This document shows positions 16,998-62,656 of a stretch of 64,000 nucleotides of DNA, in pieces; positions within the stretch are counted from its first letter, which is position 1; each line of letters starts with the position of its first letter. The notes under the pieces were generated by a model. That model worked only from the letters and a program-made list of their open reading frames with translations, was not told the origin of the DNA and searched no databases. Both the position numbers and the translations under genes were made by a program. The DNA is taken from NCBI RefSeq assembly GCF_022045235.1, contig NW_027266266.1, positions 24,862,001-24,926,000 of the forward strand, in the 5' to 3' direction. Source of the DNA: Haliotis cracherodii. Lineage: Eukaryota.

Positions 16998-19462
16998 ATG
17001 AGCTCCTACGCCCAAGGTATGTCATTACTTCTACATTAGTAAGTTTGGTTTGTTTGTTTTTCTTTAATGACTTATTGACTTAACTGACTCTGAAGTAGGC
17101 CTAGATCTAGTCGATGGAAAAGAAGAAACTTCCAGAACAAACTGCCATGAAAGATGATCACTTGTCCAGTGTTCAGATCTTTTCCACGTTAATTGAGGCC
17201 AATTTTTCAGCCTTTTCCACAAACACATTCGTGTTTTAGTATATAAGTGAGGTTTCTGTAAATGTTTTCCAGCAGGCATGGTCAAATATTAGTAGCCATA
17301 TATGGATATAGGTTACCTGTCATTAATAGTTGAGGTAGTGTTGGTTGCCAAGGCTGTTTCTGCTAATAGGATGTTGGACTTCTACAATTGTTTATAGAAC
17401 TGTTCAATACGTAAACACAAACCTATTGTAAACTATTTGTAGCCTTGAACTTCAGTCCTCTCCCAACTGCCCAATAGTTAAGGCATCATAAAAGAAAGAA
17501 ATTTGCCATTTTTAAAGTTTTGCTTTTTGTTATCATTATAAGGACTAGGGAATAGGGCTGGGACGATTCCAAATTTACTATCCGGGTACCCATCCCCCTA
17601 TTACTCGATTGTCGGTACAGATTGTCCGATTGGGAATAGTTTGCCCTGCCAAAATGTATTTAGATACACATTTAAAACGATCTGGTCAACTCCGAAGTTG
17701 ACTGACGTTTTATCTTTATTCAAACATATGAAAGTCAGAAGGAATGTGTGCATAGTCCGAAAGAAATGCGAACATTAGTGACTTGTAGTGTAACCATAGA
17801 GTTCTAACCACTGAGCTTTTTATCATTAAACAATATATGACGTGACTAACCACGGGTCTGGTTAGTCCTGTGGGTACCTGGGTCCAACTCAGCACCCACC
17901 CGATCCGAGTTACCGTCCCAGCCCTACTAGTGGACTACAATGTTTCTACCTGCCTTAGATATAGTTTACATGCCATTAATCACTGAGTTGGTGTTTGGTT
18001 TCCAATGATGTTTCCAATCCAGTTTATTGTCGGTCTCTACAATGGTTTATTGAATTGTTCAACAGGTATTCACAACAATCAAATACCAATGATCATACAG
18101 TTCAGTAGTAGCTCCATATCAACATACTGTGTAAAATTGTGACTGAAATGTGTACTCTCCGAAGAATAAGAAATCACTTTTCTAAACTTCTAATGTTCAA
18201 TTACTATTAAATACAAGGACTTTCCACTGGTCTGTATCCTGTAACATTGGGGATAAAGCACATTGTCTTGCAGTTGCAGTGACTGACTGACAATGGTGTA
18301 CAAAAAACAGGACATATACTTATGTTCGTTTGTGCTATTATCTAAAAAAACACTTGACAGTTGAAGAAAGGAAATAAAATCCTGGTCACTGCTTTTTTAA
18401 CACATGCAACTCGTACCTTTTCTCCAGTCTACACCAATACAAATATATTTCTACTTTTAGCCCAACCTGTAGTAAGCAGTTCCTTCATATGTTCATGTTA
18501 TCACATATCGTAAATATTCTCTTACATCTCTTAATGTCCCAAAGCTGTTTACCTAATAATACAATGATTGTGTATTGTGTACCAAAGGTTTGTGTATTTT
18601 TTTGTTAATGGCATCTAATAATTGGCAGTGTAACTTGTATTTACCACAATCTGTATATCCTAGCTGTTTTGCAAAAAAATACTAAGTAATCATCACCTTC
18701 ACATTTTAGTGTGTAATACATTTACCCCAATGACTGTGGATGAACAGAATAACTGTTAACATTTTTTTAAATTTGTTCATATACTGTTCAATTGATTCTG
18801 TCTTGTTTATCCCTATTTAAGACTCTCATACCTTCTTACTTGACAGCTGTTGACCTCGTGATCAGGTTCCCCTTGAACTTTGACATCTGGGCCCCTCTTC
18901 GCCAAGTGGGTGTCTTAGGAATCAGTACTTTGCTAGAGTTGTTGTAAAATTGAAATTGGTTCTTGTATTTCTGACTATTTCATGAGTGTATGGACTATAT
19001 AATCTATATATAAAAATTATCTATATAATCTTCAACTAAGACACATAATATTGACTTGCAAACTAATGTAAATGTGGAGTAATAACCACACATCTTTGTC
19101 ACTAACGTACTCCTGACATTATGCATGAGCATCCCTTAAATTCAATCAATTTCCAGCATCTACCCTCATCTTTCTCTACTTGCTACTTAAATCTTCTGTC
19201 ACTCTCTACATGTCCTTCTCTCCCTCCCTGTCAGCATCGTCCTGGGAGATACATGACCATCCTTGACCCCCTGTCAGAGCTGCCCACCCCTCTCACCTCT
19301 TTCCCTGCCCCTCTCTCTACCCCCGTCCTCAGTGATGCCACTCACTTCGTCGAAATCAACCTCGATGATGACGACACCCCTACCCAGTCCCCAGTTCGAG
19401 TCATCCTGTCACGTGTGTCCGGATTCTTGAGGAGAGTGTTCCGTGTCAAGATGGACGCTTAG
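16998..19462 (+). CDS. Uncharacterised 101-aa protein, copy 1 (exons 16998-17016, 18847-18905, 19235-19462)
   Basis: ATG...CAAG|gtatgt; ttgacag|CTG...CAA|gtgggt; polypyrimidine-tcag|CAT...TAG. Phases 1 and 0 join into MSSYAQAVDLVIRFPLNFDIWAPLRQHRPGRYMTILDPLSELPTPLTSFPAPLSTPVLSDATHFVEINLDDDDTPTQSPVRVILSRVSGFLRRVFRVKMDA. Confidence 0.75.
17553..17926. mobile_element. hAT-type MITE family A nested inside a family-B MITE in intron 1
   Basis: TAGGGCTGGG...CCCAGCCCTA with 8-bp TSD CTAGGGAA/CTAGTGGA (CTAGTGAA/CTAGTGGA in units 2-4). It splits the family-B sequence at ataagga|ctagtggact. Present in units 1-4, absent from unit 5. Confidence 0.8.
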
Positions 19463-19815
19463 AGTGACATCTTGCTACCTCTTGGACGATGTGTCATATA
19501 ATAATTATTTATATTAAAACATAAATACAAGATATTTTGTGCGTTTGGCAGTTTTGGACACTTTGGAACTTTTTTTTAACTTTTTGTACCTTTCGGACAT
19601 TTTGTGCTTTTGGCTTTTTTCAATTACACATTTTGGCCCTTTCGAGTGTTCCGTGTCAAGATGGACGCTTGGAGTGACATCTTACTAATTCTTGGACGCT
19701 GTGTCATATAATAATTAATTACATTCAATCATAAATACAAGATATTTTGTGCTTTTGGCAGTTTTTCTACTTTTCGGACCCTTCGGACACTTTTTATGCT
19801 TTTGGTTGTTTTTTT
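19434..19815 (+). repeat. Tandem duplication (210-bp period) of the stop-codon/3'UTR region
   Basis: gagtgttccgtgtcaagatggacgctt starts at 19434 and again at 19644; the second copy has TGG for TAG. Present in units 1-4, single copy in unit 5. Confidence 0.85.
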
Positions 19816-22800
19816 CCCCAGAAATATACGCTATTTGTATTATACGTTGAAAGACGTATAGTTTGATTTACACATTTAGGCACTTTTGGACAAGGTATTA
19901 ACGTCTATTTTATTTGATTAAATCGATTACCAATCAATATTAACTATTAAAGATTGTCTTTAGTTTTTAGCCCCTTTGCTTTGTCTTTTGTTAAATAACA
20001 CACGATCTTGAAAATCAATCAAGCAACGCGTGGTATGTGCAGAAACTGCATATAACGTTTATAGCATCATATATTGTTCGTGTGGACTCATCACAACAGA
20101 TAGTGACAGATTCTAACTCGATTCTTTGCATCTCTCTCAACATATTTGCTACAGCATATAACATAGACTTACAATACTAAGAGTGCCAGGTGCCCTGTTG
20201 GTACGCGGGATTCGGGTTCTATTTAAAGGGTATTCAGCAGTGTGGTACGCGGGACGCAAATAAAATCGTATTTGATACGCAGATTCAACATCTCTAAAAT
20301 AAAAGGTGTAGGTTACAAAATCCTTTACATATCATATTTTTTTCTGTGATAAGTTCTTTAATTGCACCCTTTTCTCAATGCTTTTGACTGTTGCGGTAAG
20401 TAGTATTCGAGATTCAGGGGTGAGCAATTGCACCCTCAATACTTGTACCACTAAGATCAATTTGTGCATACAGTCCCTGGAGTCTGTACTGAACTCCGCT
20501 AACGAAGTCACATGACTCAAATTAGATCCCAGATTAGTTCTGTCCTACTACTGCTGAACACTGGATTTGATTAAAATGGTACATAAATGACAATCATACT
20601 TTAGAGACCGTAGTGAGTAAGTTTGGTTAAATGCGGCTTTGACGCAGGTTACAGGCGGATACCACTAGCACGGGTAGAGTGCTGACAGAGCAGGGGTCAA
20701 TACTAAGGAGAATCCAAGATTCGAACCCACGATCATTTGGTCCTGGTACAGTGACCGACGCAACTGCACAGATACCAAACATCCCTTGGCCACCCTGCCC
20801 CTTTGCATATTCGAAATAATGCTAGAGTAGCTGGTCCTATGTCCTAGAGTTCCTTGATTTCCTATGTAGCTGTACTAAAGAGGAGGCGCATTCATCGACT
20901 ATTGGTACGAGTTTATAGAAATCTTCCGGCCATATCACGACGATGGACATCAAGTCACTAGCTTATACTGTAGTCTGCCTTTGAATATACGAAAGTGTGT
21001 GAGTGAGTGTATGTTCTTCAGTAATATTTCAGCTATATCAAAGAAGTCTGTAAAGTAATCGAGTCTGGACCAGGGAAACCAGTGGTTGACTGCATTAGCA
21101 ACGACCCACACGGTCGAAGCACGGTCGAGTGGGGGGGATTATTCTACCCAGCAATCTCCAAGTGGGGTTAGTAACTCAGGTTCCCAGTTTTATTTCTACA
21201 CGATTCCATTTGAATCGCCACTGAATTGGCAGCCAAAGTTGAGACCAGTTTTTATGTTACGATATGCAAATTCGTGTAAAACGTCACAACATGTCAGTTA
21301 GTGTATCAATATTGGATCAGATATGTGTCCTGTGTCAAACGCTACGTTAAATAGATAATATTGATAATGTCGCTGATTCATTTCCAGTGTGCTCAGAGAG
21401 ATCGGATGACCTCGAGTTGATATACAACAGGCGAAACACCGATTACAGATAAAGAATTTCGTCAAAAAATACTGTGTCAAATGTTGTTGGCTCATTATTG
21501 TATCACAGTAAACTTTGTTCATATATTTTTGCCGTCTGTTCACAGGAAGATCCGAAGCCAACCCCTCCACTCGCTAGTGGTGTATCACTGAGAAGCCTTC
21601 GTCCCCATCTGATGTGTATCGCGCCTGTTATAAACACGTATCAGTGAAACGTTTAATAAAATTCTGCTGTGAATGTTAATCTGTTGTGTACTTCTTTGTA
21701 GCTCTGTTCAAATTCTTATGGTGTTATTATCACTTGAGTGAGTGGGTGAATTGGGTCTAAAGCTGCGTTTGCAAAGTGTGGAATGCAGGTCTTGAGCGCA
21801 TACAGTTTAAGTGAAACCCACGGGATTCGAACCCATGGTCATAGGATTCTTACACGCCAAAGGCGACGAACATTTGGACGTGTTGTATCCTTGGTGAATG
21901 TAACTAAATACCAGTGGAAAGAAGGTACCTAACATTCTTTAACCAGTGATTATATAGGATTATTTTGTCAGAACATCCAGCACAGCAAGTGTTCTAAAAG
22001 TAAAACCCGAGGACATTATTTGTTTTCAGGACACAGAATGTCAGAAAAATAATAAAAACAGTCCTTTCATTTTGGACTACACTCTTCGGTAAGTTAATCA
22101 GACTCGTCATTCATATAAGAGACCACTTAAATCGGTGGAAAGTCACGGTGAAACAAACTGGTTAAAGTTACTGTGGCGTCTGTGCCATGTACCCGTATAA
22201 GGGCGCTATTTATCATCAATATTGCACGGGGAGAATCAAGAAGAACTACCCTGTTCGACACCATCGTTTATTCTCCCCAAGGGAAGTAACTCTCATCGGT
22301 ACACCATCTTCGGTAAAGGCCAACGGGATTATCTCCCTTAAAAAATACAACTATAACCGTCAGATACGGATCAAAGTTACAGCAATTCTAACCAAACTAC
22401 TCGCCACATCAACCTTATCTTTTTAAAGTGAACAAAACGCACTTTGAAACATTTTTGTATGAACGGGACGGACAGCACCTATTCCTATTCGTGGCGGGGA
22501 ATAAAAACAACTAAGAAAATGGTCTTATTATTGAAATTTTACACTGTAATAATACCGTGTTATAGTATTGTCCACGGCGCCGTCACAAAACACTAAAACA
22601 TTATGGCAATGCATTGTGTGGCTCCAGAATATGTAGTGACATGAAAGCTAACAGATGCAAGACTGTTTTCTTCAAAATAAATGCTACGAACATTCATCAT
22701 AAATACCTTGCACACATTTGATGCTAAATAATAACCACCGTAATAAAACAACACCCGTGGCACATGTGCTTACCTGACGTTAATGTTTTGTTGCTACCAG

Positions 22801-23058
22801 AGAAATATGATGCATTATCATTAAAGTTCAACAAATACATTCCCGTGAATATCCTTAAAATTGGCACACAAGGATGAAGTTCCTCAACAAAATGGAAATG
22901 TTATGTTTAGAAACAAGTACTAGTACTTATACTGGTAAACCTACAGTCCGTTTCTGACATACATACAATTGTATCAACCTGCAAGTTGAACTTGAAACAA
23001 GAGAACTGACATGCGACAACAAAATTGTTACGTAAATCTGAAAATACCATAATACATG

Positions 23059-24531
23059 TGTTACACTTGCCGGGAAGCAAGGTGAGATGCAGCCACGAAC
23101 CTGTGGGGAAGAATAACGCAAAGATAATAGCTGATGTTCACTCGGTGCTTTACTGTCAAAAATGGCGAGTCTCATGAAGGCAAAGCCCATTCAACATATG
23201 TATCACCAAACGGTTACACAAATAATTGGTTACATGTTGATAACATCGTGTAGTGTGTACTACAATCTATATACTTTCATTGCTTGTTGTCTAGGGGTAT
23301 ATTTACTTAATGAAAGTACAAACAACTCTGCACCAAGAGCACATGGCAATTACCGAATGGCACTATAAAGAACTACCAAGTAACTACAATTCAATTGGAA
23401 CAACCACTGTGTATTACAGAACAAGATAATCCAGAAATGCCTGGCATATTAATGATCATCAAGACACTGAATATGCATCTTTGTAATGCTTAACTGCTGT
23501 TGTTACATACAAGGTAACAATACTGATTCAGTCTTATGCAGTTACTTTAATATTCCAATGTCAACTTGATTATTGATTATCTTGTTTGTATAAAAAGTAA
23601 TATTTAAACAACACTTTTGTGCTTAACAATAAATTTCAAAACTAAAACAATTAACAGATTCTGACAGGAGATGACCCATTTCACACAGGCTGTTATTGTT
23701 TATCATGACGATGAGATACCACTTCCAGAAATTCCCTGCAATTATCGCTAGTTGCATGAACATTTAAGCTTATTCCTTGGTATACTACTGTCATTAAATA
23801 TAATTCCAAATACAGAACAACTTCCTTCCTACACATGCCAAAAACAGTTAAAAGAGATGAAAACACTCGGAGCAATTGTTTACACATGGGCACAGCCATC
23901 TTGAAACTCTCAGCGCCCTTAGCGGAAGGAAGATAACTCTTACTGGCATAACATGCCGACTAATATAAACCATTGAATGTGGAACTTAGATGAATTGATT
24001 GACTTATTAACTACTAATCATACTCCTGGGAAACATAAAAAATATCTAACATTCCTATTTAATAATAGTATTTGATGGCTTAGAATATACACAATTTACA
24101 TCAACTTGACTGGTCACGTTACCCGTGAGGCCGGTGCAGTCTGACCCTGAACTTGCCTAGCTAATTCTAGCGCTTTCACAATTTGTACAAACCTATCACC
24201 TACATATATAGAACCTTGGACTTATAATAAATGTTTATGTATGTATATTGATGTGGTAATTACCTGTGGGGAAGAATAACGCAAAGATAATAGCTGATGT
24301 TCACTCGGTGCTTTACTGTCAAAAATGGCGAGTCTCATGAAGGCAAAGATGAGAACCCCTTAGTTGAAATACCATATAAGGACGTGCTTACATAGAGTTG
24401 CTTCCCCTCTGACCACGGTTGACACGATAAAGAATGCCATAGCTGCAGTAACTGAGTGACGAACTATTAGATTTTGTGGGCCCCCCTTTTTAAATGCAAC
24501 ATTAAAATAAAGCAATTTACCACATGTTACA
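23059..24531 (-). repeat. 3' LTR (1473 bp)
   Basis: Matches 30886-32026 and 48920-50392. Contains an 87-bp internal direct repeat at 23099-23185 and 24262-24348. Confidence 0.95.
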
Positions 24532-25161
24532 CTCTCCCCGGGAAAACAAATGTCGACTCGACATTTAACTATCATGAACAACCAGTGACTAAAAGTCAAA
24601 CAAGATGCATTCAATCTAATACAAGATTCTTAAATAACTCCTGAAACCACATGTACAACCTTTCAATGTCTTCTACAAGACACAATATAGCACTTCCTAG
24701 GGAACATTAATAATGTTCTGACGCTATTCGGAAAGTTACTTTGAAGATCAAGTCTTCACTCTATACACACTGTACAGAAAATCAGATAAGTGTAGAAACA
24801 TGGATGGCCAGTCCATATTAATCACAACTCTGCCTGGGCTAAACCCAGAGTGCATTGTAGCTTATTTCAATGCTGTACACACTGCTAGCTAATTATTCTA
24901 GTTGATTCATCCCTCCACATCTCTTCTTCAATCAGTCAGATGAGATACACAACAATACTAGGTACTAATAAATCAATACTTGGAATTGTACTTTTATCTC
25001 AGTCACATCACAAGGCAGTATCAACTAGGTAAAATTCCTTATCACATGAAAATTCCTTTGGCACATGGCACTTCGTAAATACTAGAAACATACAGGAGAT
25101 CGGTGAATAGTTCTTCATCAAATAGTTCTTCATCAAAGAGTTCAATCATACTTCTTTCACA

Positions 25162-30700: not shown

Positions 30701-30863
30701 TTATTTCATCCTGCATACGAGACTCAGGAACTCTAGACATGGACAACGTCAAACATGGCTTCCATCCCTTTCTCCAAAGTTTATGGATCTCTTGCAGTCC
30801 CGTTTCACCATCAGCGACCTCGGTAACGTTCTACCCTTGAGTGTAGGACATAGTCATCCCTAG

Positions 30864-30881
30864 ATCCCGGACGAGCCCCCA
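30864..30881 (-). promoter_or_regulatory. Primer-binding site complementary to tRNA-Pro
   Basis: TGGGGGCTCGTCCGGGAT lies 4 nt inside the 5' LTR boundary and matches the canonical 18-nt tRNA-Pro PBS. Confidence 0.92.
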
Positions 30882-30885
30882 AAAT

Positions 30886-33841: not shown

Positions 33842-36322
33842 ATGAGCCCCTACGCCCAAGGTATGTCATTACTTCTACATTAGTAAGTTTGGCTTTTTTT
33901 CTTTCTTTAATGACTTATTTACTTAATTGACTCTGAAGTAGGCCTAGATCTAGCCGATGGAAAAGAAGAAACTTCCAAAACAAACTGCCATGAAAGATGA
34001 TCACTTGTCCAGTGTTCAGATCTTTTCCACGTTAATTGAGGCCAATTTTTCTGCCTTTTCAACAATCACATTCGTGTTTTAGTATATAAGTGAGGTTTCT
34101 GTAAATGTTTTCCAGCAGGCATGGTCAAATATTAGTAGCCATATATGGATACAGGTTACCTGTCATTAATAGTTGAGGAAGTGTTGGTTGCCAAGGCTGT
34201 TTCTGCTAATAGGATGTTGGACTTCTACAATTGTTTATAGAACTGTTCAATACGTAAACACAAACGTATTGTAAACTATTTGTAGCCTTGAACTTCAGTC
34301 CTCTCCCAACTGCCCAATAGTTAAGGCATCATAAAAGAAAGAAATTTGCCATTTTTAAAGTTTTGCTATATGTTATCATTATAAGGACTAGTGAATAGGG
34401 CTGGGATGAGTCCAAATTTACTATCCGGGTTTCCATCCCCCTATTACTCGATTGTCGGTACAGATTGTCCGATTGGGAATAGTTTGCCCTGCCAAAATGT
34501 ATTTAGATACACATTTAAAACGATCTGGTCAACTCCGAAGTTGACTGACGTTTTATCTTTATTCAAACATATTAAAGTCAGAAGGAATGCGTGCATAGTC
34601 CGAAAGAAATGCGAACATTAGTGACTTGTAGTGTAACCATAGAGTTCTAACCACTGAGCTTTTTATCATTAAACAATATATGACGTGACTAACCACGGGT
34701 CTGGTTAGTCCTGTGGGTACCCGGGTCCAACTCAGCACCCACCCGACCCGAGTTACCGTCCCAGCCCTACTAGTGGACTAAAATGTTTCTACCTGCCTTA
34801 GATATAGTTTACATGCCATTAATCAGTGAGTTGGTGTATGGTTTCCAATGCTGTTTCCAATCCAGTTTGATGTTGGTCTCTACAATGGTTTATTGAATTG
34901 TTCAATAGGTATTCACAACAATCAAATACCAATGATCATACAGTTCAGTAGTAGCTCATATAAACATACTGTGTAAAATTGTGATTAAAATGTGTACTCT
35001 CCGAAGAATAAGAAATCACTTTTCTAAACTTTAACTCCAACACTGACAACATCATCGGTAATGTTCAATTACTATTAAATACAAGGACTTTCCACTGGTC
35101 TGTATCCTGTAACATTGGGGATAAAGCACATTGTCTTGCAGTTGCAGTGACTGACTGACAATGGTGTACAAAAAACAGGACATGTACTTATGTTCGTTTG
35201 TGCTATTATCTAAAAAAACACTTGACAGTTGAAGAAAGGAAATATAATCCAAGTCACTGCTTTTTTAACACATACCTTTTCTCCAGTCTACACCAATACA
35301 AATATATTTCTACTTTTAGCCCAACCTGTAGTAAGCAGTTCCTTCATATGTTTATGTTATCACATATCGTAAATATTCTCTTACATCTCTAAATGTCCCA
35401 AAGCTGTTTACCTAATAATACAATGATTGTGTATTGTGTACCAAAGGTTTGTGTATTTTTTGGTTATTGGCATCTAATAATTGGCAGTGTAACTTGTATT
35501 TACCACAATCTGTATATCCTAGCTGTTTTGCAAAAAAATACTAAGTAATCATCACCTTCACATTTTAGTGTGTAATACATTTACTCCAATGACTATGGAT
35601 CAACAGAATAACTGTTAACATTTTTTTTAAATTTGTTCATATACTGTTCAATTGATTCTGTCTTGTTTATCCCTATTTAAGACTCTCATTCCTTCTTACT
35701 TGACAGCTGTTGACCTCGTGATCAGGTTCCCCTTGAACTTTGACATCTGGGCCCCTCCTCGCCAAGTGGGTGTCTTAGGAATCAGTACTTTGCTCGAGTT
35801 GTTGTAAAATTGAAATTGGTTCTTGTATTTCTGACTATTTCATGAGTGTATGGACTATATAATCTATATATAAAAATTATCTATATAATCTTCAACTAAG
35901 ACACATAATATTGACTTGCAAACTAATGTAAATGTGGAGTAATAACCACACATCTTTGTCACTAACGTTCTCCTGACATTATGCATGAGCAGCCCTTAAA
36001 TTCAATCAATTTCCAGCATCTACCCTCATCTTTCTCTACTTGCTACTTAAATCTTCTGTCACTCTCTACATGTCCTTCTCTCCCTCCCTGTCAGCATCGT
36101 CCTGGGAGATACATGACCATCCTTGACCCCCTGTCAGAGCTGCCCACCCCTCTCACCTCTTTCCCTGCCCCTCTCTCTACCCCCGTCCTCCGTGATGCTC
36201 CTCACTTCGTCGATATCAACCTCGATGATGACGACACCCCTACCCAGTCCCCAGTTCGAGTCATCCTGTCACGTGTGTCCGGATTCTTGAGGAGAGTGTT
36301 CCGTGTCAAGATGGACGCTTAG
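33842..36322 (+). CDS. Uncharacterised 101-aa protein, copy 2 (exons 33842-33860, 35707-35765, 36095-36322)
   Basis: Same splice sites and exon lengths (19/59/228). Variant MSPYAQ...APPRQ...LRDAPHFVDINL. Confidence 0.75.
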
Positions 36323-40683: not shown

Positions 40684-42914
40684 TACAACAGATACATTCC
40701 CGTGAATATCCTTAAAATGGACACACAAGGATGAAGTTCCTCAACAAAATGGAACTGTTACATTTAGAAACAAGTACTAGTACTTATACTGGTAAACCTA
40801 CAGTCAGTTTCTGACATTCATACAATTGTATCAACCTGCAAGTTGAACTTGAAACAAGAGAACTGACACGCGACAACAAAATTGTTACTTAAATCTGAAA
40901 ATATCAAAATACAAGTAGTAACCATGATAATACAATCTACAGAACAATTAATAAAATCAGAGTCTTGGATTGAATATGTCCATATCTTTGAGTGAGTGTC
41001 TTCACCCATTTGTTGTTTGTTTATTTGTTGTTTAACGCAACACTCGGCAATATTCCAACTATATACGACGGCGGTTTGTAAATAATCGAGTCTGGACCAG
41101 ACAATCCAGTGATGGATATCATGAGCATCAACCAAGTCAACGAGCCTGACAACCGACAACAAGCATATTCATCTTACGTCAAGCATAGGTTGCTGAAGAC
41201 CTATTCTCACCGGGATATTTACGAGTTTCAACTAGTGTTTGACACAATTGGGTGAGGAAGAGAATATATGGATTTCAACTGCTTTATTATGAGGATCACA
41301 ACGTTTCGGAGTATATACTTTCTCCTTCATCAGGTGTAGCAGCAGTTGAACCAGTTTACGGTACACCATCATATCATCGGTAATCAAGGTCAACTGGATT
41401 ATCTCCCCTTAATTATTAACATAAATAATGAAATACGACTATAACCATCAGAACAAAGTTGCATCAATTATGACTACGGCTGGGGCGAGATCAAATTTAC
41501 TACCCGGGTACCCACCCCCCTGTTACCCGGCCCTACCCCGGTATCTGCTGTAGGTCTCAAGAGATTTGACCAAATGTCCGATTGGGAATAGTTTGACCGT
41601 ATTTAGATACCCGTATAAAAGGAACTTGTCATGCACACACTGAAGTTGACGGAAGTTTTATCTTTATTCAAACACATAAAGTCAGAAGGAATGCGTGGCT
41701 AGTCAGAAAGAAATGTGAACATTTGTGACTAGTAGTGTTACCATGGTGTTCTAGATAATTTTGCCATTAAACAATATATCACGTGACTAACCAAGGGTCC
41801 GGGTAGTCCTGTGAGTACCCGGTTCCTACACAGTACCCACCCGACCCGAGTACCCGAGTTACCCGTCCCAGCCCTAACTATGACTTAACTTCTCCTCGCC
41901 CCGTTACCCAAACAGTAACAGGCTCCTTACTTCTTTGGTGTAGACACAAAATGCACTATACCTTCTTCGTGTGCATAATTAATGTCCAGAAAGTTGAATA
42001 GTCTTGCAATTTGTGCCGCCAAAGTAGTAAAACTGAAAAAAACCATACATTACTGAATAGCAAAAGGCACAGGTTCAGTATTTGTCTGGTGAGTATACAA
42101 AGTTTTATCTTAATGTCACCATTTATCAATGGTTTATGATTAATGTTCTGGAAAAGAACTCTACCATGAACAAAGTCATGAATAGAAAATGGCACTTTCC
42201 TGCTCTGTTTGCCGGGGCTGACTACTGTTGTGCTAACAATTACTTGGGAAGGTGTCCATTGCTGTTATTTAACCAGTTCACTTCTCCTTCACTTTCAAAA
42301 CCTATACATGAAGGTCGAGAGTTATCAGTTCTGAAGAGTGTGTCCAGTCAAGTCCACAACGACCGTTTCAATTATTTATTTTCCTGTATTCCAAAGATTT
42401 TTAACATCATATCTTATACAGGAGCCTATTAACTGCTGGATTTTGATGCTCTGCGTCGTCGCTATTGTCTTGTCTGATATGCATACAATCTATACAACTC
42501 AGCAGCGAGAGAAACTAACAGTTTTAGTCAACTAGTCCTTATAATGGTAACATATAGCAAAGCCCTTTAAAAGTGCAAATTTCTACTTGTAATAATGATA
42601 CTTTAACAACTGGGTCCCAGTCTGGCGAGGACTAACCTACTAGAGCCAATGTCTAACGCTGCTCAGTGTGGACTCACTCGTTTTTAACCACCCAACAACT
42701 GAAAACATTACTGGGATCCTGACTTGCGTAGAGCATAAAGAAAACCAGTCAAGCTGTCACGTGATACTATGACCGTCTCGCGAGATTGATGACGTCGCCA
42801 TGACGACACTTCACTACTGATATCGCCATTGCTGTGATCATCATACTGCTATCATCTTGCTACTATTTTGCTGCCATTTGCCTCGTATTTCGCTCATCTT
42901 CGTCTGCTTACGAC

Positions 42915-45406
42915 ATGAGCTCCTACGCCCAAGGTATGTCATTACTTCTACATTAGTAAGTTTGGCTTTTTTTTCTTTCTTTAATGACTTATTTACTTAC
43001 TTGACTCTGAAGTAGGCCTAGATCTAGCCGATGGAAAAGAAGAAACTTCCAGAACAAACTGCCATGAAAGATGATCACTTGTCCAGTGTTCAGATCTTTT
43101 CCACGTTAATTGAGGCCAATTTTTCTGCCTTTTCCACAAACACATTCGTGTTTTAGTATATAAGTGAGGTTTCTGTAAATGTTTTCCAGCAGGCATGGTC
43201 AAATATTAGTAGTCATGTATGGATATAGGTTACCTGTCATTAATAGTTGAGGTAGTGTTGGTTGCCAGGCTGTTTCTGCTAATAGGATGTTGGACTTCTA
43301 CAATTGTTTATAGAACTGTTCAATACGTAAACACAAACGTATTGTAAACTATTTGTAGCCTTGAACTTCAGTCCTCTCCAAACTGCCCAATAGTTAAGGC
43401 ATCATAAAAGAAGGAAATTTGCCATTTTTAAAGTTTTGCTATATGTTATCATTATAAGGACTAGTGAATAGGGCTGGGACGAGTCCAAATTTACTACCCG
43501 GGTACCCATCCCCCTATTACTCGATTGTCGGTACAGATTGTCCGATTGGGAATAGTTTGCCCTGCCAAAATGTATTTAGATACACATTTAAAACGATCTG
43601 GTCAACACCAAAGTTGACTGACGTTTTATCTTTATTCAAACATATGAAAGTCAGAAGGAATGTGTGCATAGTCCGAAAGAAATGCGAACATTAGTGACTT
43701 GTAGTGTAACCATAGAGTTCTAACCACTGAGTTTTTTATCATTAAACAATATATGACGTGACTAACCACGGGTCTGGGTAGTCCTGTGGGTACCCGGGTC
43801 CAACTCAGCACCCACCCGACCCGAGTTACCGTCCCAGCCCTACTAGTGGACTACAATGTTTCTACCTGCCTTAGATATAGTTTACATGCCATTAATTAGT
43901 GAGTTGGTGTTTGGTTTCCAATGATGTTTCCAATCCAGTTTATTGTCGGTCTCTACAATGGTTTATTGAATTGTTCAACAGGTATCCACAACAATCAAAT
44001 ACCAATGATCATACATTTCAGTAGTAGCTCAATATCAACATACTGTGTAAAATTGTGACTGAAATGTGTACTCTCCGAAGAATAAGAAATCACTTTTCTA
44101 AACTTTAACTCCAACACTGACAACATCATCGGTAATGTTCAATTACTATTAAATACAAGGACTTTCCACTGGTCTGTATCCTGTAACATTGGGGATAAAG
44201 CACATTGTCTTGCAGTTGCAGTGACTGACTGACAATGGTGTACAAAAAACAGGACATATACTTATGTTCGTTTGTGCTATTATCTAAAAAAACACTTGAC
44301 AGTTGAAGAAAGGAAATAAAATCCTGGTCACTGCTTTTTTAACACATCCAACTCGTACCTTTTCTGCAGTCTACACCAATACAAATATATTTCTACTTTT
44401 AGCCCAACCTGTAGTAAGCAGTTCCTTCATATGTTCATGTTATCACATATCGTAAATATTCTCTTACATCTCTTAATGTCCCAAAGCTGTTTACCTAATA
44501 ATACAATGATTGTGTATTGTGTACCAAAGGTTTGTGTATTTTTTTGTTATTGGCATCTAATAATTGGCAGTGTAACTTGTATTTACCACAATCTGTATAT
44601 CCTAGCTGTTTTGCCAAAAAACTACTAAGTAATCATCACCTTCACATTTTAGTGTGTAATACATTTACCCCAATGACTTTGGATCAACAGAATAACTGTT
44701 AACATTTTTTTAAATTTGTTCATATACTGTTCAATTGATTCTGTCTTGTTTATCCCTATTTAAGACTCTCATACCTTCTTACTTGACAGCTGTTGACCTC
44801 GTGATCAGGTTCCCCTTGAACTTTGACATCTGGGCCCCTCCTCGCCAAGTGGGTGTCTTAGGAATCAGTACTTTGCTAGAGTTGTTGTAAAATTTGAAAT
44901 TGGTTCTTGTATTTCTGACTATTTCATGAGTGTATGGACTATATAATCTCTATATAACAATTATCTATATAATCTTCAACTAAGACACATAATATTGACT
45001 TGCAAACTAATGTAAATGTGGAGTAATAACCACACATCTTTGTCACTAACGTTCTCCTGACATTATGCATGAGCAGCCCTTAAATTCAATCAATTTCCAG
45101 CATCTACCCTCATCTTTCTCTACTTGCTACTTAAATCTTCTCTCACTCTCTACATGTCCTTCTCTCCCTCCCTGTCAGCATCGTCCTGGGAGATACATGA
45201 CCATCCTTGACCCCCTGTCAGAGCTGCCCACCCCTCTCACCTCTTTCCCTGCCCCTCTCTCTACCCCCGTCCTCCGTGATGCCCCTCACTTCGTCGATAT
45301 CAACCTCGATGATGACGACACCCCTACCCAGTCCCCAGTTCGAGTCATCCTGTCACGTGTGTCCGGATTCTTGAGGAGAGTGTTCCGTGTCAAGTTGGAC
45401 GCTTAG
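42915..45406 (+). CDS. Uncharacterised 101-aa protein, copy 3 (exons 42915-42933, 44790-44848, 45179-45406)
   Basis: Same structure. MSSYAQ...LRDAPHFVDINL...KLDA. Confidence 0.75.
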
Positions 45407-48400: not shown

Positions 48401-48919
48401 TGTATGAACGGTGTACCGTGTTATAGTATTGTCCACGGCGCCGTCACAAAACACTAAAACATTATGGCAATGCATTGTGTGGCTCCAGAATATGTAGTGA
48501 AATGTAAACTAACAGATGCAAGACTGTTTTCTTCAAAATAAATGCTACGAACATTCATCATAAATACCTTGCACACATTTGATGCTTAATAATAACCACC
48601 GTAATAAAACAACACCCGTGGCACATGTGCTTACCTGACGTTAATGTTTTGTTGCTACCAGAGAAATATGATGCATTCTCAATAAAGTTTAACAAATACA
48701 TTCCCCTGAATATCCTTAAAATTGGCACACAAGGATGAAGTTCCTCAACAAAATGGAAATGTTACATTTAGAAACAAGTACTAGCACTTATACTGGTAAA
48801 CCTACAGTCAGTTTCTGACATACATACAATTGTATCAACCTGCAAGTTGAACTTGAAACAAGAGAACTGACATGTGACAACAAAATTGTTACTTAAATCT
48901 GAAAATACCATAATACATG

Positions 48920-50392: not shown

Positions 50393-52145
50393 CATGTAGT
50401 AACCATGATAATACAATCTACAGAACAATTAATATAATCAGCGTCTTTGACTGAATATGTCCATATCTTTGAGTGAGTATCTTCACCCATTTGTTGTTTG
50501 TTTATTTGTTGTTTAACGCAACACTCGGCAATATTCCAACTATTTACAACGGCGGTTTGTAAATAATGGAGTCTGGACCAGACAATCCAGTGATGGATAT
50601 CATGAGCATCAACCAAGTCAACGAGCCTGACAACCGATCCGTTAGTCGCCTCTTACAACAAGCATATTCATCTTACGTCAAGCAGAGGTTGCTGAAGACC
50701 TGAAGAACTAGTTTTTGACACAATTGGGTGAGGAAGAGAATATATGGATTTCAACTACTTTATTATGAGGAACACAACGTTTCGGAGTATATACTTTCTC
50801 CTTCATCAGGTGTAGCAGCAGTTGAACCAGTTTACGGTACACCATCATATCATCGGTAATCAAGGTCAACTGGATTATCTCCCCTTTATTACTAACACAA
50901 ATAATGAAATACGACTATAACCATCAGAACAAAGTTGCATCAATTATGACTAGGGCTGAGGCGAGTCCAAATTTACTACCCGGGTACCCACCCCCCTGTT
51001 ACCCTGCCCTACCCCGGTATCCGCTGTAGGTCTCAAGAGATTTGACCAAATGATTGGGAATAGTTTGACCGTATTTAGATTCTCGTATAAAACGAACTTG
51101 TTATGCACACACTGGAGTTGACGGAAGTTTTATCTTTATTCAAACACATAAAGTCAGAAGGAATACGTGGCTAGTCAGAAAGAAATGTGAACATTTGTGA
51201 CTAGTAGTGTAACCATGGTGTTCTAGATAATTTTGCCATTAAACAATATACCACGTGACTAACCACGGGTCTGGGTAGTCCTGTGAGTACAAACTGAAAA
51301 AACCCATACATTACTGAATAGCAAAAGGCACAGGTTAAGCATTTGTCTGGTGAGAATACAAAGTTTTATCTAAATGTCACCATATATCAACGGTTTATGA
51401 TTAATGTTCTGGAAAAGAACTCTACCTTGAACGAAAATAGAAAATGGCACTTTCCTGCTCTGTTTGCTGGGGCTGACTACTGTTGTGCTAACAATTACTT
51501 AGGAAGGTGTCCATTGCTGTTATTTAACCAGTTCACTTCTCCTTCACTTTCAAAGCCTATATATGAAGGTCGAGAGTTAACAGTTCTGAAGAGTGAGTCC
51601 AGTCAAGTCCACAACGACCGTTTCAATTATTTATTTTCCTGTATTCCAAAGATTTTTAACATCATATCTTATACAGAAGCCTATTGGCTGCTGGATTTTG
51701 ATGCTCTGCGTCGTCGCTATTGTCTTGTCTGATATGCATACTAACAGTTTTAGTCAACTAGTCCTTATAATGGTAACATATAGCAAAGCCCTTTAAAAGT
51801 GCAAATTTCTACTTGTAATAATGATACTTTAACAACTGGGTCCCAGTCTGGCGAGGACTAACCTACTAGAGCCAATGTCTAACGCTGCTCTGTGTGAACT
51901 CACTCGTTTTGAACCACCCAACAACTGAAAACATTACTGGGATCCTGACTTGCGTAGAGCAAAAAGAAAACCAGTCAAGCTGTCACGTCACGTGATACTA
52001 TGACCGTCTCGCGAGATTTATGACGTCGCCATGACGACACTGCACTACTGATATCGCCATTGTTGTGATCATCATACTGCTATCATCTTGCTACTATTTT
52101 GCTGCCATTTGCCTCGTATTTCGCTCATCTTCGTCTGCTTACGAC

Positions 52146-54619
52146 ATGAGCCCCTACGCCCAAGGTATGTCATTACTTCTACATTAGTAAGTTTGGCTTT
52201 TTTTCTTTCTTTAATGACTTATTTACTTAATTGACTCTGAAGTAGGCCTAGATCTAGCCGATGGAAAAGAAGAAACTTCCAAAACAAACATGAAAGATGA
52301 TCACTTGTCCAGTGTTCAGATCTTTTCCACGTTAATTGAGGCCAATTTTTCTGCCTTTTCAACAATCACATTCGTGTTTTAGTATATAAGTGAGGTTTCT
52401 GTAAATGTTTTCCAGCAGGCATGGTCAAATATTAGTAGCCATATATGGATACAGGTTACCTGTCATTAATAGTTGAGGTAGTGTTGGTTGCCAAGGCTGT
52501 TTCTGCTAATAGGATGTTGGACTTCTACAATTGTTTATAGAACTGTTCAATACGTAAACACAAACGTATTGTAAACTATTTGTAGCCTTGAACTTCAGTC
52601 CTCTCCGAACTGCCCAATAGTTAAGGCATCATAAAAGAAAGAAATTTGCCATTTTTAAAGTTTTGCTATATGTTATCATTATAAGGACTAGTGAATAGGG
52701 CTGGGATGAGTCCAAATTTACTACCCGGGTACCCATCCCCCTATTACTCGATTGTCGGTACAGATTGTCCGATTGGGAATAGTTTGCCCTGCCAAAATGT
52801 ATTTAGATACACATTTAAAACGATCTGGTCAACACCGAAGTTGACTGACGTTTTATCTTTATTCAAACATATTAAAGTCAGAAGGAATGCGTGCATAGTC
52901 CGAAAGAAATGCGAACATTAGTGACTTGTAGTGTAACCATAGAGTTCTAACCACTGAGACTTTTATCATTAAACAATATATGACGTGACTAACCACGGGT
53001 CTGGGTAGTCCTGTGGGTACCCGGGTCCAACTCAGCTTCCACCCGACCCGAGTTACCGTCCCAGCCCTACTAGTGGACTAAAATGTTTCTACCTGCCTTA
53101 GATATAGTTTACATGCCATTAATCAGTGAGTTGGTGTTTGGTTCCCAATGCTGTTTCCAATCCAGTTTGATGTTGGTCTCTACAATTGTTTATTGAATTG
53201 TTCAATAGGTATTCACAACAATCAAATACCAATGATCATATAGTTCAGTAGTAGCTCAATATCAACATACTGTGTAAAATTGTGACTGAAATGTGTACTC
53301 TCCGAAGAATAAGAAATCACTTTTCTAAACTTTAACTCCAACACTGACAACATCATCGGTAATGTTCAATTACTATTAAATACAAGGACTTTCCACTGGT
53401 CTGTATCCTGTAACATTGGGGATAAAGCACATTGTCTTGCAGTTGCAGTGACTGACTGACAATGGTGTACAAAAAACAGGACATATACTTATGTTCGTTT
53501 GTGCTATTATCTAAAAAAACACTTGACAGTTGAAGAAAGGAAATAAAATCCTGGTCACTGCTTTTTTAACACATCCAACTCGTACCTTTTCTGCAGTCTA
53601 CACCAATACAAATATATTTCTACTTTTAGCCCAACCTGTAGTAAGCAGTTCCTTCATATGTTCATGTTATCACATATCGTAAATATTCTCTTACATCTCT
53701 TAATGTCCCAAAGCTGTTTACCTAATAATACAATGATTGTGTATTGTGTACCAAAGGTTTGTGTATTTTTTTGTTATTGGCATCTAATAATTGGCAGTGT
53801 AACTTGTATTTACCACAATCTGTATATCCTAGCTGTTTTGCAAAAAAATACTAAGTAATCATCACCTTCACATTTTAGTGTGTAATACATTTACTCCAAT
53901 GACTATGGATCAACAGAATAACTGTAAACATTTTTTTTAATTTGTTCATATACTGTTCAATTGATTCTGTCTTGTTTATCCCTATTTAAGACTCTCATTC
54001 CTTTTCACTTGACAGCTGTTGACCTCGTGATCAGGTTCCCCTTGAACTTTGACATCTGGGCCCCTCCTCGCCAAGTGGGTGTCCTTTAGGAATCTACTTT
54101 GCTAGAGTTGTTGTAAAATTGAAATTGGTTCTTGTATTTCTGACTATTTCATGAGTGTATGGACTATATAATCTCTATATAACAATTATCTATATAATCT
54201 TCAACTAAGACACATAATATTGACTTGCAAACTAATGTAAATGTGGAGTAATAACCACACATCTTTGTCAATAACGTTCTCCTGAGTATCCCTTAAATTC
54301 AATCAATTTCCAGCATCTACCCTCATCTTTCTCTACTTGCTACTTAAATCTTCTCTCACTCTCTACATGTCCTTCTCTCCCTCCCTGTCAGCATCGTCCT
54401 GGGAGATACATGACCATCCTTGACCCCCTGTCAGAGCTGCCCACCCCTCCCACCTCTCTCCCTGCCCCTCTCTCTACCCCCGTCCTCAGTGATGCTTCTC
54501 ACTTCATCGAAATCAACCTCGATGATGACGACACCCCTACCCAGTCCCCAGTTCGAGTCATCCTGTCACGTGTGTCTGGATTCTTGAGGAGAGTGTTCCG
54601 TGTCAAGATGGACGCTTAG
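52146..54619 (+). CDS. Uncharacterised 101-aa protein, copy 4 (exons 52146-52164, 54016-54074, 54392-54619)
   Basis: Same structure. MSPYAQ...PTPPTSLPAP...LSDASHFIEINL. A deletion near 54285 falls in the predicted intron and leaves the CDS intact. Confidence 0.75.
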
Positions 54620-60117: not shown

Positions 60118-62656
60118 ATGAGCTCCTACGCCCAAGGTATGTCATTACTTCTGAATAAGTTAGTTTGACTTTATTCCTTCTTTTATGACTTATTTACTGA
60201 ATTAAATCTGAAGTAGGCCTACATCTAGCCAATGGAAAAAAGAAGAAACTTCCAGAACATACTGCCATCAAAGATGATCACTTGTCCAGTGTTCAGATCT
60301 TTTCCACGTTTATTGAGGCCGATTTTTCAGCCCTTTGGATCTAAACACATTGGTGTGTTTTTTTATTTAATCTAGCGATATCTACTCGACTTCAGACTGA
60401 TGGAGTGGTTCTCGACCTGGATACCATCGATTTTATGGGGACTGATGAGGGGATACCAAAAGAGATACGCTGGATCCAAAACATTTAACAATACATTCAG
60501 GGTACATTTCGATAGATCTAATTGTACCCCAGGCACATGTCGATGGGACCCAGGTCGAGAACATTCTCATCAGTGTCAGTCCACTAGTCCTTATAATGAT
60601 AACATATAGCAAAACTCCTAAATATGGCAAATTTCTACTAGTCCTTATGATACCTTTACTATTGGGCAGTTTGGCAAGGACAACAGGACTAGTGCCAATT
60701 TCTAACGCTAGAAATCCCACAAGAAGAACTTGTCATTCCTTAAACTCTTAGTGATTCGTTTTCCTGTCCAAAATGTAGGTTATTTGCCTCTTTGTCTTAT
60801 TAACAGTTCCTTTACTAGGCCCTTTTCAGCAGACTACTGTAGTTTACCCTCCATTTGCACAAATGAGGTTTTCTGTAAGTGTGAACTAGCATGCATGGGT
60901 TAGTTTTTCGTAGCCCTACATAGATATAGTTTACACGTCATTAATAAGTGAGGTAGTGTTCGTTTCCAAGGCTGTTTCTACTAAACGGTTATTGGTTTCT
61001 ACTATGGTTTATAGAGCTGTTCAACACATAGACACAACAATCAAATACCAATGAGTATACAATTCATTAATAGCCCAATATCAGCATTCTGAGTTGAATT
61101 GTGATTGAAATAAGAATAAGAAAAAGAGAAATCATTTTTCTACCTTTTAACTCCTAGACTGACTTCACTGTTACCTATACACATACTCTTAAATACAAGA
61201 ACTTTGGTGTACAAAAACACTTCATGTACTTGTGCTCGCTTGTTATATATATACGCAGTCTTAGACAAGTCCTACAGCTCTTGCCACACTGCCCAATAGG
61301 TATCATAAGGAAAGTAGAAATTTGCCCTTTGTAAGGGTTTTACTGTGTGTATCCAGTATAAGGACTATACAGTGTTAGAAATTGGCACTAGTCCCGTAGT
61401 CCTTGCCAAACTGCCTAATAGTTAAGGTATGATAAGGACTAGTAGAAATTTGACCTTTTTAGGCGGTTAGCTATATGTTATCATTATAAGGTCTAGTGGA
61501 CTAAAACTGTTAGTTTCTACCGCTCCTATAGTGGACTAAAACTGTTAGTTTCTATCGCTGACATGGCCAGTACGTTTAGTTCAGTGTACACCAATACACA
61601 TTATATTTCTGATTTTAGCAATACTTGTTGCAAGCAATCACTTCATATACCTATGTATTCACATATATCTTTAACAATGTTTTGCAACTCTACGTGTCGC
61701 ATAGCAGTTTACCTAATAATACAGTGATTGTATATTATCTTCCAGAAATTTGTGTACTTTATGTTGTTCCACTACCTCATCATTGACAGAGTAGCTTATA
61801 TCTTCCACAATCTGTATAGCCCGCTTTTCAAAACATTACTTTAATAGGTAATTTGTATTGATGATAAGAAATTGTTTTTATATGGAGTGTTAAGACTTCA
61901 TCCAGTGATGTGATCATCGCCCTTCACTTTTCAGTGTGTAATATATTTACTCAGATGACAATGGATCAACAAAAGAACTATGAATGTTTTTAAAACTCGT
62001 TTACATACTGTTCAGTTGATTCTTTCTTCTTCATCCTTATTTAAGACTCTCATTCCTTCTTATTCCACAGCTGTTGACCTCGTGATCAGGTTCCCCTTGA
62101 ACTTTGACATCTGGGCCCCTCCTCGCCAAGTGGGTGTCTTAGGAATTATTAATTTACTAGTTGTTCTAAAACTGAAACTATGTCTTGTATTTGATGAGTG
62201 TATGGACTTATGTATATGATCTTTAACTAACACACATACTATTGACTTGCAAACTAATGTACATGTGGAGTAATAAACACACATCTTTATCACTAACGTT
62301 CTCCTGACATTATGCATAATGAGTATCCCGTAAATGCAATCCATTTCCATCATCTACCTTCACCTTTCTCTACTTTCTACTTCCATCTTCTGTCACTCTC
62401 TACATGTCCTTCTCTCCCTCCCTGTCAGCATCGTCCTGGGAGGTACATGACCATCCTTGACCCCCTGTCAGAGCTGCCCACCCCTCCCACCTCTCCCCCT
62501 GCCCCTCTCTCTACCCCTGTCCTCCGTGATGCTCCTCACTTCGTCGAAATCAGTCTCGATGATGACGACACCCCAACCCAGTCCCCAGTTCGAGTCATCC
62601 TGTCACGTGTGTCTGGATTCTTGAGGAGAGTGTTCCGTGTCAAGATGGACGCTTAG
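60118..62656 (+). CDS. Uncharacterised 101-aa protein, copy 5, divergent unit (exons 60118-60136, 62071-62129, 62429-62656)
   Basis: Coding exons 1 and 2 are identical to copy 3 although intron 1 is heavily rearranged. Exon 3 has several synonymous changes and no indels. Confidence 0.78.
60396..60574. mobile_element. ~180-bp MITE with ~35-bp imperfect TIRs, unique to unit 5 intron 1
   Basis: actgatggagtggttctcgacctggataccatcga versus reverse-complement actgatgagaatgttctcgacctgggtcccatcga. Confidence 0.7.

What the first reader, a model, noticed from the sequence alone, without database searches (positions are those of the whole stretch)
16998..62656. Hidden tandemly amplified three-exon gene encoding an unrecognised 101-aa protein, intact in all five array units
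Seen: three short exons (19/59/228 nt coding) with canonical splice signals join in frame in every unit, with no indel or stop in any copy, while introns and flanks carry many indels and TE insertions. In divergent unit 5 the exons are conserved islands (coding exons 1-2 identical to copy 3; several exon-3 changes are synonymous). The ORF track shows only a 113-aa intron read-through version. Inference: the 8-kb macro-repeat is an amplified array of a lineage-specific small gene. I recognise no family.
Basis: partly seen in the sequence, partly recalled or inferred. Interest (0 to 1): 0.85.

Follow-up and report, generated by a model that had tools for sequence, protein, structure and literature searches.

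The report
Annotated abalone-only small-protein gene array
The five repeats each carry an intact three-exon gene for a 101-residue, mostly disordered protein found so far only in abalones, but four of the five are already in the public black abalone annotation as "uncharacterized protein", and the function is still unknown.

Summary
Five tandem units each carry exons of 19, 59 and 228 nt with GT-AG introns and an intact 101-aa frame.

The gene is not hidden. The products of units 1, 3, 4 and 5 match RefSeq Haliotis cracherodii proteins XP_071093286-89 letter for letter. Only unit 2 has no listed match.

The window shows five of the 11 copies of one array on a 49-Mb chromosome. The genome holds at least 59 exon-3 copies of this subfamily and about 65 more of sister subfamilies. 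Homologues exist in four Haliotis species. Nothing turned up outside the genus, and there is no Pfam or PDB match.

Within the window, constraint is weak: dN is about equal to dS among units 1-4. Across paralogues it is clear. Exons differ by 5-9%, introns and flanks by 28-40%, and dN/dS is 0.33-0.44 against the distant subfamilies. A 34-nt promoter block (TCTCGCGAGA plus CRE-like sites) is kept upstream of 38 genes.

The protein is predicted to be disordered apart from a basic amphipathic C-terminal helix. An invariant F-[VI]-[ED]-[IV] motif with acidic flanks looks like an Atg8/LC3-binding motif. That is an untested lead.

No RNA reads could be examined. This scan has reported the same family before on other DNA (s1-820429, s1-823180).

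The parts
16839..16891 (+). Unit 1 conserved promoter block: E-box GTCACGTGAT, TCTCGCGAGA, TGACGTCG, TGACGACA; 107-159 nt upstream of the ATG
16998..17016 (+). Unit 1 exon 1 (coding part, 19 nt, ATG..G|GTATGT)
18847..18905 (+). Unit 1 exon 2 (59 nt)
19235..19462 (+). Unit 1 exon 3 (228 nt with stop); the joined product equals XP_071093286.1
33683..33735 (+). Unit 2 promoter block (E-box changed to CACGTT)
33842..33860 (+). Unit 2 exon 1
35707..35765 (+). Unit 2 exon 2
36095..36322 (+). Unit 2 exon 3; the product is intact but is the only one with no identical RefSeq protein among those fetched
42756..42808 (+). Unit 3 promoter block
42915..42933 (+). Unit 3 exon 1
44790..44848 (+). Unit 3 exon 2
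45179..45406 (+). Unit 3 exon 3; product equals XP_071093287.1
51987..52039 (+). Unit 4 promoter block
52146..52164 (+). Unit 4 exon 1
54016..54074 (+). Unit 4 exon 2
54392..54619 (+). Unit 4 exon 3; product equals XP_071093288.1
59962..60014 (+). Unit 5 promoter block (CGCG element changed to TCTCGCAAGA)
60118..60136 (+). Unit 5 exon 1
62071..62129 (+). Unit 5 exon 2
62429..62656 (+). Unit 5 exon 3; product equals XP_071093289.1

Best explanation
SHOWN. The window covers five of the 11 units of a head-to-tail array on a 49-Mb black abalone (Haliotis cracherodii) chromosome. The only conserved content of each 8-9 kb unit is one small protein-coding gene: a roughly 55-nt promoter block, three exons and two GT-AG introns. 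The gene encodes a 101-aa protein with no signal peptide, no membrane span and no cysteines. The protein belongs to a Haliotis-restricted superfamily of more than 100 genes per genome, arranged in tandem arrays on many chromosomes, and it is under protein-level purifying selection. INFERRED. Similarity between units is mosaic, which fits unequal crossing-over and gene conversion as the way the array grows and is homogenised. Transcription would start downstream of a TATA-less module made of CpG-containing sites: TCTCGCGAGA (the CGCG/BANP-type element), CRE-like TGACGTCG and TGACGACA, and the E-box GTCACGTGAT. MECHANISM (my own odds about 0.15-0.2). The protein would be a cytosolic, intrinsically disordered adaptor. 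Its invariant F-[VI]-[ED]-[IV] motif with acidic flanks would dock by beta-augmentation onto an Atg8/LC3/GABARAP-type partner. Its basic amphipathic C-terminal helix (residues 80-97) would bind a membrane or a second partner. Its Pro/Ser/Thr-rich middle would be a variable linker that can be phosphorylated. The high copy number would serve dosage.
For: The five copies are intact with canonical splice sites. Eleven exon-3 copies lie at C3:24.822-24.933 Mb. There are at least 59 in the genome, 57 with no stop in the match, plus a sister subfamily with at least 41 copies on the same chromosome and more elsewhere, linked by hhalign at 98% probability, E=1.4e-13. Homologues occur in H. rufescens, H. 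rubra and H. asinina. A profile search of 1.84 billion cluster representatives returned only Haliotis proteins. Against other arrays, only the promoter, exon 2, exon 3 and their near flanks align. Mean pairwise mismatch among 13 representatives is 4.6% for exon 2, 8.9% for exon 3, 31.7% for the middle of intron 2 and 35.5% for the 3' flank; codon positions rank 2<1<3. dN/dS is 0.33-0.44 against the distant subfamilies, with bootstrap upper bounds below 1. All indels are in frame and no other frame is open. The 34-nt promoter block occurs 38 times in 1.18 Gb, the reversed control 0 times, and the copies I checked against lie about 2.4-2.9 kb upstream of a family exon 3; it is kept even in the C27 subfamily. 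The TCTCGCGAGA element is described in PMC6192621. AlphaFold2 gives mean pLDDT 57 with a single helix at 79-96. That helix has a hydrophobic moment of 0.60-0.76 and net charge +4/+5 in every subfamily, and no membrane-span-like segment exists. F64, L69 and the PxSxLP and LSR..RVF..K positions are invariant across the superfamily. The LIR and GIM motif definitions and the optineurin 'FVEI' motif are in PMC7615515.
Against: RefSeq models are predictions. Among units 1-4, exon divergence is no lower than intron divergence and dN is about equal to dS, so the youngest copies show no measurable constraint. Unit 5 has a CpG-to-CpA change in the CGCG element and unit 2 a changed E-box, so not every copy need be active. 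The functional reading rests on short-motif resemblance only. The core LIR pattern is common by chance, the residue before the Phe is His in the main subfamily rather than the preferred acidic, Ser or Thr residue, and the E-box is missing in some paralogues and in the C27 subfamily. No structural or sequence relative with a known function exists.
Confidence: 0.85

Rival explanations
1. The frame is open only because the copies are young and are homogenised by gene conversion. On this reading the ORF is not a functional protein gene in this array.
For: Among units 1-4, exon 3 differs by 0.9-3.9% against 0.9-2.8% for the introns, and most changes are nonsynonymous. One array member outside the window has a premature stop in exon 2. 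Similarity between units is mosaic, which suggests conversion or unequal exchange.
Against: Paralogues whose introns differ by about 30% keep the frame, the splice sites and only in-frame indels. dN/dS is 0.33-0.44 in deep comparisons. Of 59 exon-3 matches, 57 have no stop. The family is kept in four species, and the promoter block is conserved.
Confidence: 0.07
2. The constraint acts mainly on the nucleotide or RNA sequence (a regulatory RNA, a small-RNA target, or exon-limited conversion), and the protein is secondary.
For: Fourfold-degenerate sites differ by only 13.9% pairwise, against 31.7-35.5% for introns and flanks. A 35-nt stretch of exon 2 is identical in 29 of 39 copies. dN is about equal to dS among main-subfamily paralogues. 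GC3 is 0.64-0.73 against intron GC of 0.34-0.42.
Against: The codon-position pattern 2<1<3, the in-frame indels and the single open frame point to a protein. In distant subfamilies exon 2 has many synonymous changes with the peptide kept. dN/dS is below 1. There is no Rfam match. The high GC3 fits codon-usage selection or GC-biased conversion acting on top of coding constraint.
Confidence: 0.05
3. The gene is cargo of, or derived from, a mobile element or virus that spread the units around the genome.
For: There are many copies on many chromosomes. The units are littered with transposons: an LTR retrotransposon, a helicase-carrying element and a short dispersed repeat.
Against: Between arrays, only the promoter and the exons are shared, with no terminal repeats or transposase next to the gene. 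The gene has spliceosomal introns and a host-type promoter. No Pfam domain was found. The transposons sit in only some units: the LTR element is in units 1 and 3 only.
Confidence: 0.02
4. The protein is a precursor of a cationic amphipathic (antimicrobial-like) peptide released from the C-terminus.
For: The C-terminal 18-mer has a hydrophobic moment of about 0.7 and net charge +5. Tandem expansion is common for mollusc immune effectors (general knowledge, not tested here).
Against: There is no signal peptide, since the N-terminus carries D9, R13 and D19. There are no cysteines, and no dibasic processing site lies before the helix. The most conserved parts include the N-terminal motif, which a pro-region would not need.
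Confidence: 0.03

Closest known systems
RefSeq 'uncharacterized protein' models of Haliotis cracherodii (XP_071093281-XP_071093290, XP_071093308) and their relatives in H. rufescens (e.g. LOC125380034, LOC124134954), H. rubra and H. asinina
   Same: Four of the five window genes give exactly these proteins. They share the same length, the same three-exon build and the same motifs.
   Different: Nothing differs. This is the same family. Only unit 2's product was not among the listed members.
Sister subfamilies in the same genome (112-aa XP_071083078 type; 111-aa P0048 and P0049 types; the C27 array)
   Same: They share the three-exon build, the PxSxLP motif, the F-[VI]-E-[IV] motif with an acidic run, and the LSR..RVF..K(M)DA helix. 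The C27 subfamily also keeps the CGCG and CRE promoter block.
   Different: The N-terminal DLVIRFPLNFDIWAPP motif is replaced in the 111-aa subfamilies. The middle region is longer and the repeat units are shorter, about 3.6-7 kb.
Small disordered Atg8/LC3-binding proteins and LIR motifs (e.g. the optineurin LIR 'DS-FVEI'; GIM (W/F)-(V/I)-X-V; PMC7615515)
   Same: A core F-V-E-I, F-V-D-I or F-V-E-V motif lies in a disordered stretch with acidic neighbours, and its Phe is invariant.
   Different: There is no sequence homology to any known LIR protein. His rather than Asp, Ser or Thr precedes the Phe in the main subfamily. Binding is untested.
CGCG-element (TCTCGCGAGA) TATA-less promoters of vertebrate housekeeping genes (PMC6192621, PMC2920758)
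   Same: An exact 10-nt palindrome lies about 130 nt upstream of the ATG, next to other CpG-containing factor sites, and is conserved across 38 genes.
   Different: The element was described in vertebrate CpG-island promoters. Here it sits in a mollusc multicopy lineage-specific gene, and the start site and binding factor are unknown.

Membership tests
Haliotis-restricted 101-112-aa 'uncharacterized protein' family (RefSeq models) | Protein sequence identical or nearly identical to the annotated members | tested here: met
   Units 1, 3, 4 and 5 equal P0013, P0010, P0001 and P0012 letter for letter. The exon-3 peptide hits have E values of 1e-38 to 6e-26.
Haliotis-restricted 101-112-aa 'uncharacterized protein' family (RefSeq models) | Three-exon build: a tiny first coding exon, a 59-nt exon 2, and the rest of the protein in exon 3 | tested here: met
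   All five units have it, as do 19 of 20 sampled paralogues and the sister subfamily.
Haliotis-restricted 101-112-aa 'uncharacterized protein' family (RefSeq models) | Transcribed and spliced as modelled | not testable with these tools
Earlier scan note s1-820429 calls a sister array 'spliced', but I did not check that.
Any Pfam, PDB or Atlas-named family | A significant profile or sequence match | tested here: not met
   No Pfam family at E<=10 for eight members. No PDB chain at E<=10. Atlas scores were 0.77 or lower, with no named hit.
LIR/AIM-containing Atg8-family binders | Core [W/F/Y]-x-x-[I/L/V] in a disordered region with acidic or phosphorylatable flanks (PMC7615515) | tested here: met
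   The motif reads HF[VI][ED]I followed by DDDD in the main subfamily, DFVEI and DFIEI in the 111-aa subfamilies, and HFVEV (a full GIM) in P0044. F64 is invariant. The region is predicted to be disordered. The pattern is weakly specific.
LIR/AIM-containing Atg8-family binders | Motif-dependent binding to the LIR docking site of an Atg8 protein | not tested
CGCG-element (BANP-motif) promoters | An exact TCTCGCGAGA close to the transcription start | tested here: inconclusive
   The exact motif lies 130-139 nt upstream of the ATG in units 1-4 and is conserved family-wide. The start site is unknown.
Transposon or virus cargo gene | Gene bounded by element termini or linked to transposition proteins in every copy | tested here: not met
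   Only the promoter and exons are shared between arrays. The transposon proteins lie in insertions that are private to some units.

The most novel reading that the evidence does not exclude
Abalones may have evolved and massively amplified (more than 100 genes) a genus-specific family of mini-adaptors. These would bind Atg8/GABARAP-type proteins through an optineurin-like F-V-E-I motif and bind membranes through a basic amphipathic helix. They would be driven by a methylation-sensitive CGCG/CRE/CLEAR-like promoter, and their exons would be kept nearly uniform across chromosomes by exon-limited, GC-biased gene conversion. That would make this a taxon-restricted layer of autophagy or trafficking control with unusual concerted evolution.
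Probability: 0.1. Interest if true: 0.6.

Novelty: already known. Interest (0 to 1): 0.3.

Why it matters
As a discovery this adds little. The genes are already in public annotation, and this scan has met the family twice before.

What remains open is the biology. More than 100 intact copies of a genus-restricted, disordered protein exist in this genome. They share a nearly invariant promoter module, and their synonymous sites evolve two to three times more slowly than their introns. That combination argues for an important, probably high-dosage role in abalone that nobody has described.

The motif lead (LIR-like F-V-E-I plus an amphipathic helix) and the conserved CGCG/CRE block give concrete experiments for a family that now carries no annotation. 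Abalones are farmed, and the black abalone is endangered, so a large uncharacterised gene family has some applied interest.

Tried and rejected

The joined spliced model was never sent to a search tool. Exon 3 was searched by reference, and the database proteins it returned were used afterwards. For that reason unit 2's joined product was not looked up.

These searches found nothing:
- Pfam.
- PDB sequence profile.
- ESM Atlas, twice.
- Rfam and tRNA scans.
- Literature searches for 12 LOC identifiers and for abalone orphan or tandem families.

The AlphaFold2 model was too poor (pLDDT 57) for a fold search, so none was run.

A homo-oligomer test of residues 55-101 with four copies gave no answer (score 0.02). 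It counts neither for nor against self-association.

I tried intron loss or retrocopies as indirect proof of splicing. The long contiguous matches in the sister subfamily turned out to be in-frame intron read-through, not fused exons.

No overlapping or antisense ORF explains the synonymous constraint.

I considered PP1 RVxF, 14-3-3, export-signal and SUMO-interaction readings of the motifs by eye and dropped them because the patterns do not fit. A calmodulin 1-8-14 pattern (L84, L91, V97) fits the main subfamily only.


Full report
**1. The observation**

A local BLAST of the three proposed exons finds exactly five copies of each in the window.
- Exon 1 starts at 16998, 33842, 42915, 52146 and 60118 (19 nt, followed by GTATGT).
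- Exon 2 starts at 18847, 35707, 44790, 54016 and 62071 (59 nt, AG before, GTGGGT after).
- Exon 3 starts at 19235, 36095, 45179, 54392 and 62429 (228 nt with the stop, preceded by CTCCCTCCCTGTCAG).

All five copies join to a 306-nt frame of 101 aa with no stop or frameshift. Intron lengths vary between 1830 and 1934 nt and between 299 and 330 nt. The ORF list shows only the 113-aa read-through ORF at 19121-19462. The description is therefore accurate.

**2. The array**

A self-comparison shows units of 8-9 kb. Unit 1 is stretched to 16.8 kb by an insertion. Window 1-1080 is the tail of an earlier unit, separated from its continuation at 14296 by a 13.2-kb inserted element.

The window is G000:C3:24862001-24926000. 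Exon-3 matches on C3 between 24.822 and 24.933 Mb number 11, so the window shows five units of an 11-unit array. One of the outside units has TGG->TAG in exon 2.

Similarity between units is mosaic. Upstream of the ATG, units 1 and 3 pair (1.2% different) and units 2 and 4 pair (1.6%). Downstream of the gene, units 1, 2 and 3 group together against unit 4. That pattern fits unequal exchange or conversion better than one simple duplication order.

**3. The gene is already annotated**

The exon-3 peptide, searched by reference, hit 101-104-aa 'uncharacterized protein' entries of Haliotis cracherodii, H. rufescens and H. asinina. Cluster listings add H. rubra and show ten H. cracherodii members with near-consecutive accessions on a contig of 49,011,830 bp. 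That is the length of C3.

I compared the locally joined products with the fetched proteins:
- Unit 1 equals XP_071093286.1.
- Unit 3 equals XP_071093287.1.
- Unit 4 equals XP_071093288.1.
- Unit 5 equals XP_071093289.1.
- Unit 2 has no identical member.

The joined model itself was not sent to any search tool, so unit 2's product was not looked up. This scan has also reported the family before on other contigs (s1-820429 and s1-823180).

**4. Size and range of the family**

The genome has at least 59 exon-3 matches to this subfamily on a dozen contigs, and 57 of them have no stop in the match. A sister subfamily (111 aa, P0049) adds at least 41 copies on C3 between 19.4 and 23.5 Mb, with more on C34, C12, C45, C56 and C80. 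It is linked to this family by hhalign at 98% probability and has the same three-exon build.

A profile search of 1.84 billion cluster representatives returned only two clusters, both from Haliotis. There is no Pfam match, no PDB match and no Atlas lead.

**5. Constraint**

Within the window the signal is weak.
- Among units 1-4 the exons are no more alike than the introns.
- Nonsynonymous changes outnumber synonymous ones.
- Unit 5 versus unit 1 shows 13/306 exon changes against 273/3155 in aligned non-coding DNA (p=0.006). Against the upstream 2 kb alone the difference is not significant (p=0.08).

Across paralogues the signal is strong.
- In 19 of 20 sampled loci, exon 2, both splice sites of intron 2 and exon 3 are kept, and all length changes are in frame.
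- Conservation drops sharply at the borders of exon 2: 98% inside against about 60-67% in the flanking 80 nt.
- Among 13 representatives of separate arrays, the mean pairwise mismatch is 4.6% for exon 2, 8.9% for exon 3, 31.7% for the middle of intron 2 and 35.5% for the 3' flank. Codon positions rank 2<1<3.
- Against the two distant subfamilies, dN/dS is 0.33-0.44, with bootstrap intervals below 1.
- Between arrays, only the promoter, the exons and their near flanks align. The gene is therefore the unit's only conserved content.

**6. An unexplained feature**

Fourfold-degenerate sites differ by 13.9% pairwise. That is two to three times less than the introns and flanks. Among main-subfamily paralogues dN is about equal to dS.

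No other reading frame is open. GC3 is 0.64-0.73, against intron GC of 0.34-0.42. Exon-limited GC-biased conversion, codon-usage selection for high expression, or splicing enhancers in very short exons could each contribute. I could not separate them.

**7. The promoter**

Upstream regions of 14 paralogues were aligned. They share a block about 100-160 nt before the ATG: GTCACGTGAT, then TCTCGCGAGA, TGACGTCG and TGACGACA.
- In the window the composite motif occurs five times, once per unit, against 0 expected by chance.
- Unit 5 has TCTCGCAAGA and unit 2 has CACGTT.
- Genome-wide, the 34-nt block occurs 38 times with up to 3 mismatches. The reversed control occurs 0 times.
- The copies I compared with the exon-3 coordinates lie about 2.4-2.9 kb upstream of a family exon 3.
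- The block is kept in the C27 subfamily, whose exon-3 peptide is only about 60% identical.

TCTCGCGAGA is the 'CGCG element' of vertebrate TATA-less promoters (PMC6192621, PMC2920758). GTCACGTGAT matches nine of the ten bases of the CLEAR consensus GTCACGTGAC (PMC7195473). Which factors bind here is inference.

**8. The protein**

AlphaFold2, run with a 16-sequence alignment, gives mean pLDDT 57 and one helix at residues 79-96. That helix has a hydrophobic moment of 0.60-0.76 and net charge +4 or +5 in every subfamily. No segment is hydrophobic enough for a membrane span. The charged residues D9, R13 and D19 at the N-terminus rule out a signal peptide.

The superfamily-invariant positions are M1, Q6, F14, P38, S40, L42, P43, T47, S54, F64, L69, S78, R81, L84-R86, R93-F95 and K98.

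The stretch around F64 reads HF[VI][ED]I.LDDDD, DFVEI, DFIEI or HFVEV. This fits the core LIR [W/F/Y]-x-x-[I/L/V]. It equals the optineurin 'FVEI' motif in units 1 and 5 and in the P0049 subfamily, and it fits the GABARAP motif (W/F)-(V/I)-X-V in the P0044 subfamily (definitions in PMC7615515).

This is a lead from motif resemblance, not a test. I give the Atg8-adaptor reading about 0.15-0.2.

**9. What could not be done**

No RNA evidence could be examined. The one complex-prediction job, a homo-oligomer of the C-terminal half, gave no answer.

**10. Verdict**

The finding is real and correctly modelled. It is already annotated, and it is one array of a large abalone-only family of unknown function. 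Interest is modest.

Noticed in passing
window 23059-32027 (minus strand); solo copy at 48920-50393: A Ty3/gypsy-type LTR retrotransposon sits in the spacer of unit 1. Its ORFs carry MYND finger, RT, RNase H and integrase domains. Its TG..CA LTRs lie at 23059-24532 and 30886-32027 and are 99.7-100% identical apart from a 332-nt indel. Unit 3 has a solo LTR at the same site with the same flanks, and units 2, 4 and 5 have none. The insertion therefore predates the split of units 1 and 3, and unit 3 later collapsed to a solo LTR.
   Followed up: partly
window 1081-14295: A 13.2-kb insertion splits the spacer of the preceding unit. It carries ORFs with DEAD/Helicase_C and DUF6589 domains.
   Followed up: partly
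window 19435-19852, and the same place in units 2-4: Units 1-4 carry a tandem duplication of about 209 nt covering the last 27 coding nt plus the start of the 3' UTR. In the second copy the stop reads TGG. Unit 5 has a single copy. The protein is not affected.
   Followed up: partly
window 41014-41129, 46962-47053 and 50495-50665, and matching places in other units: A short dispersed repeat of about 100-200 nt occurs several times per unit in both orientations and also in arrays on other chromosomes. It is probably a SINE or MITE.
   Followed up: no
G000:C3:24831933 (outside the window; L030 3389-3466): One member of the same 11-unit array has TGG->TAG at the Trp21 codon in exon 2, while its exon 3 is still open.
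   Followed up: yes
window 33683-36322 (unit 2): Unit 2 is intact, but its product is the only one of the five with no identical RefSeq protein among the cluster members. Its promoter E-box is changed from CACGTG to CACGTT. Whether it is unannotated was not checked, because the joined product was not searched.
   Followed up: partly
G000:C3 19.4-26.3 Mb: This roughly 7-Mb stretch of one chromosome holds at least 60 genes of the superfamily in several arrays of two subfamilies.
   Followed up: no
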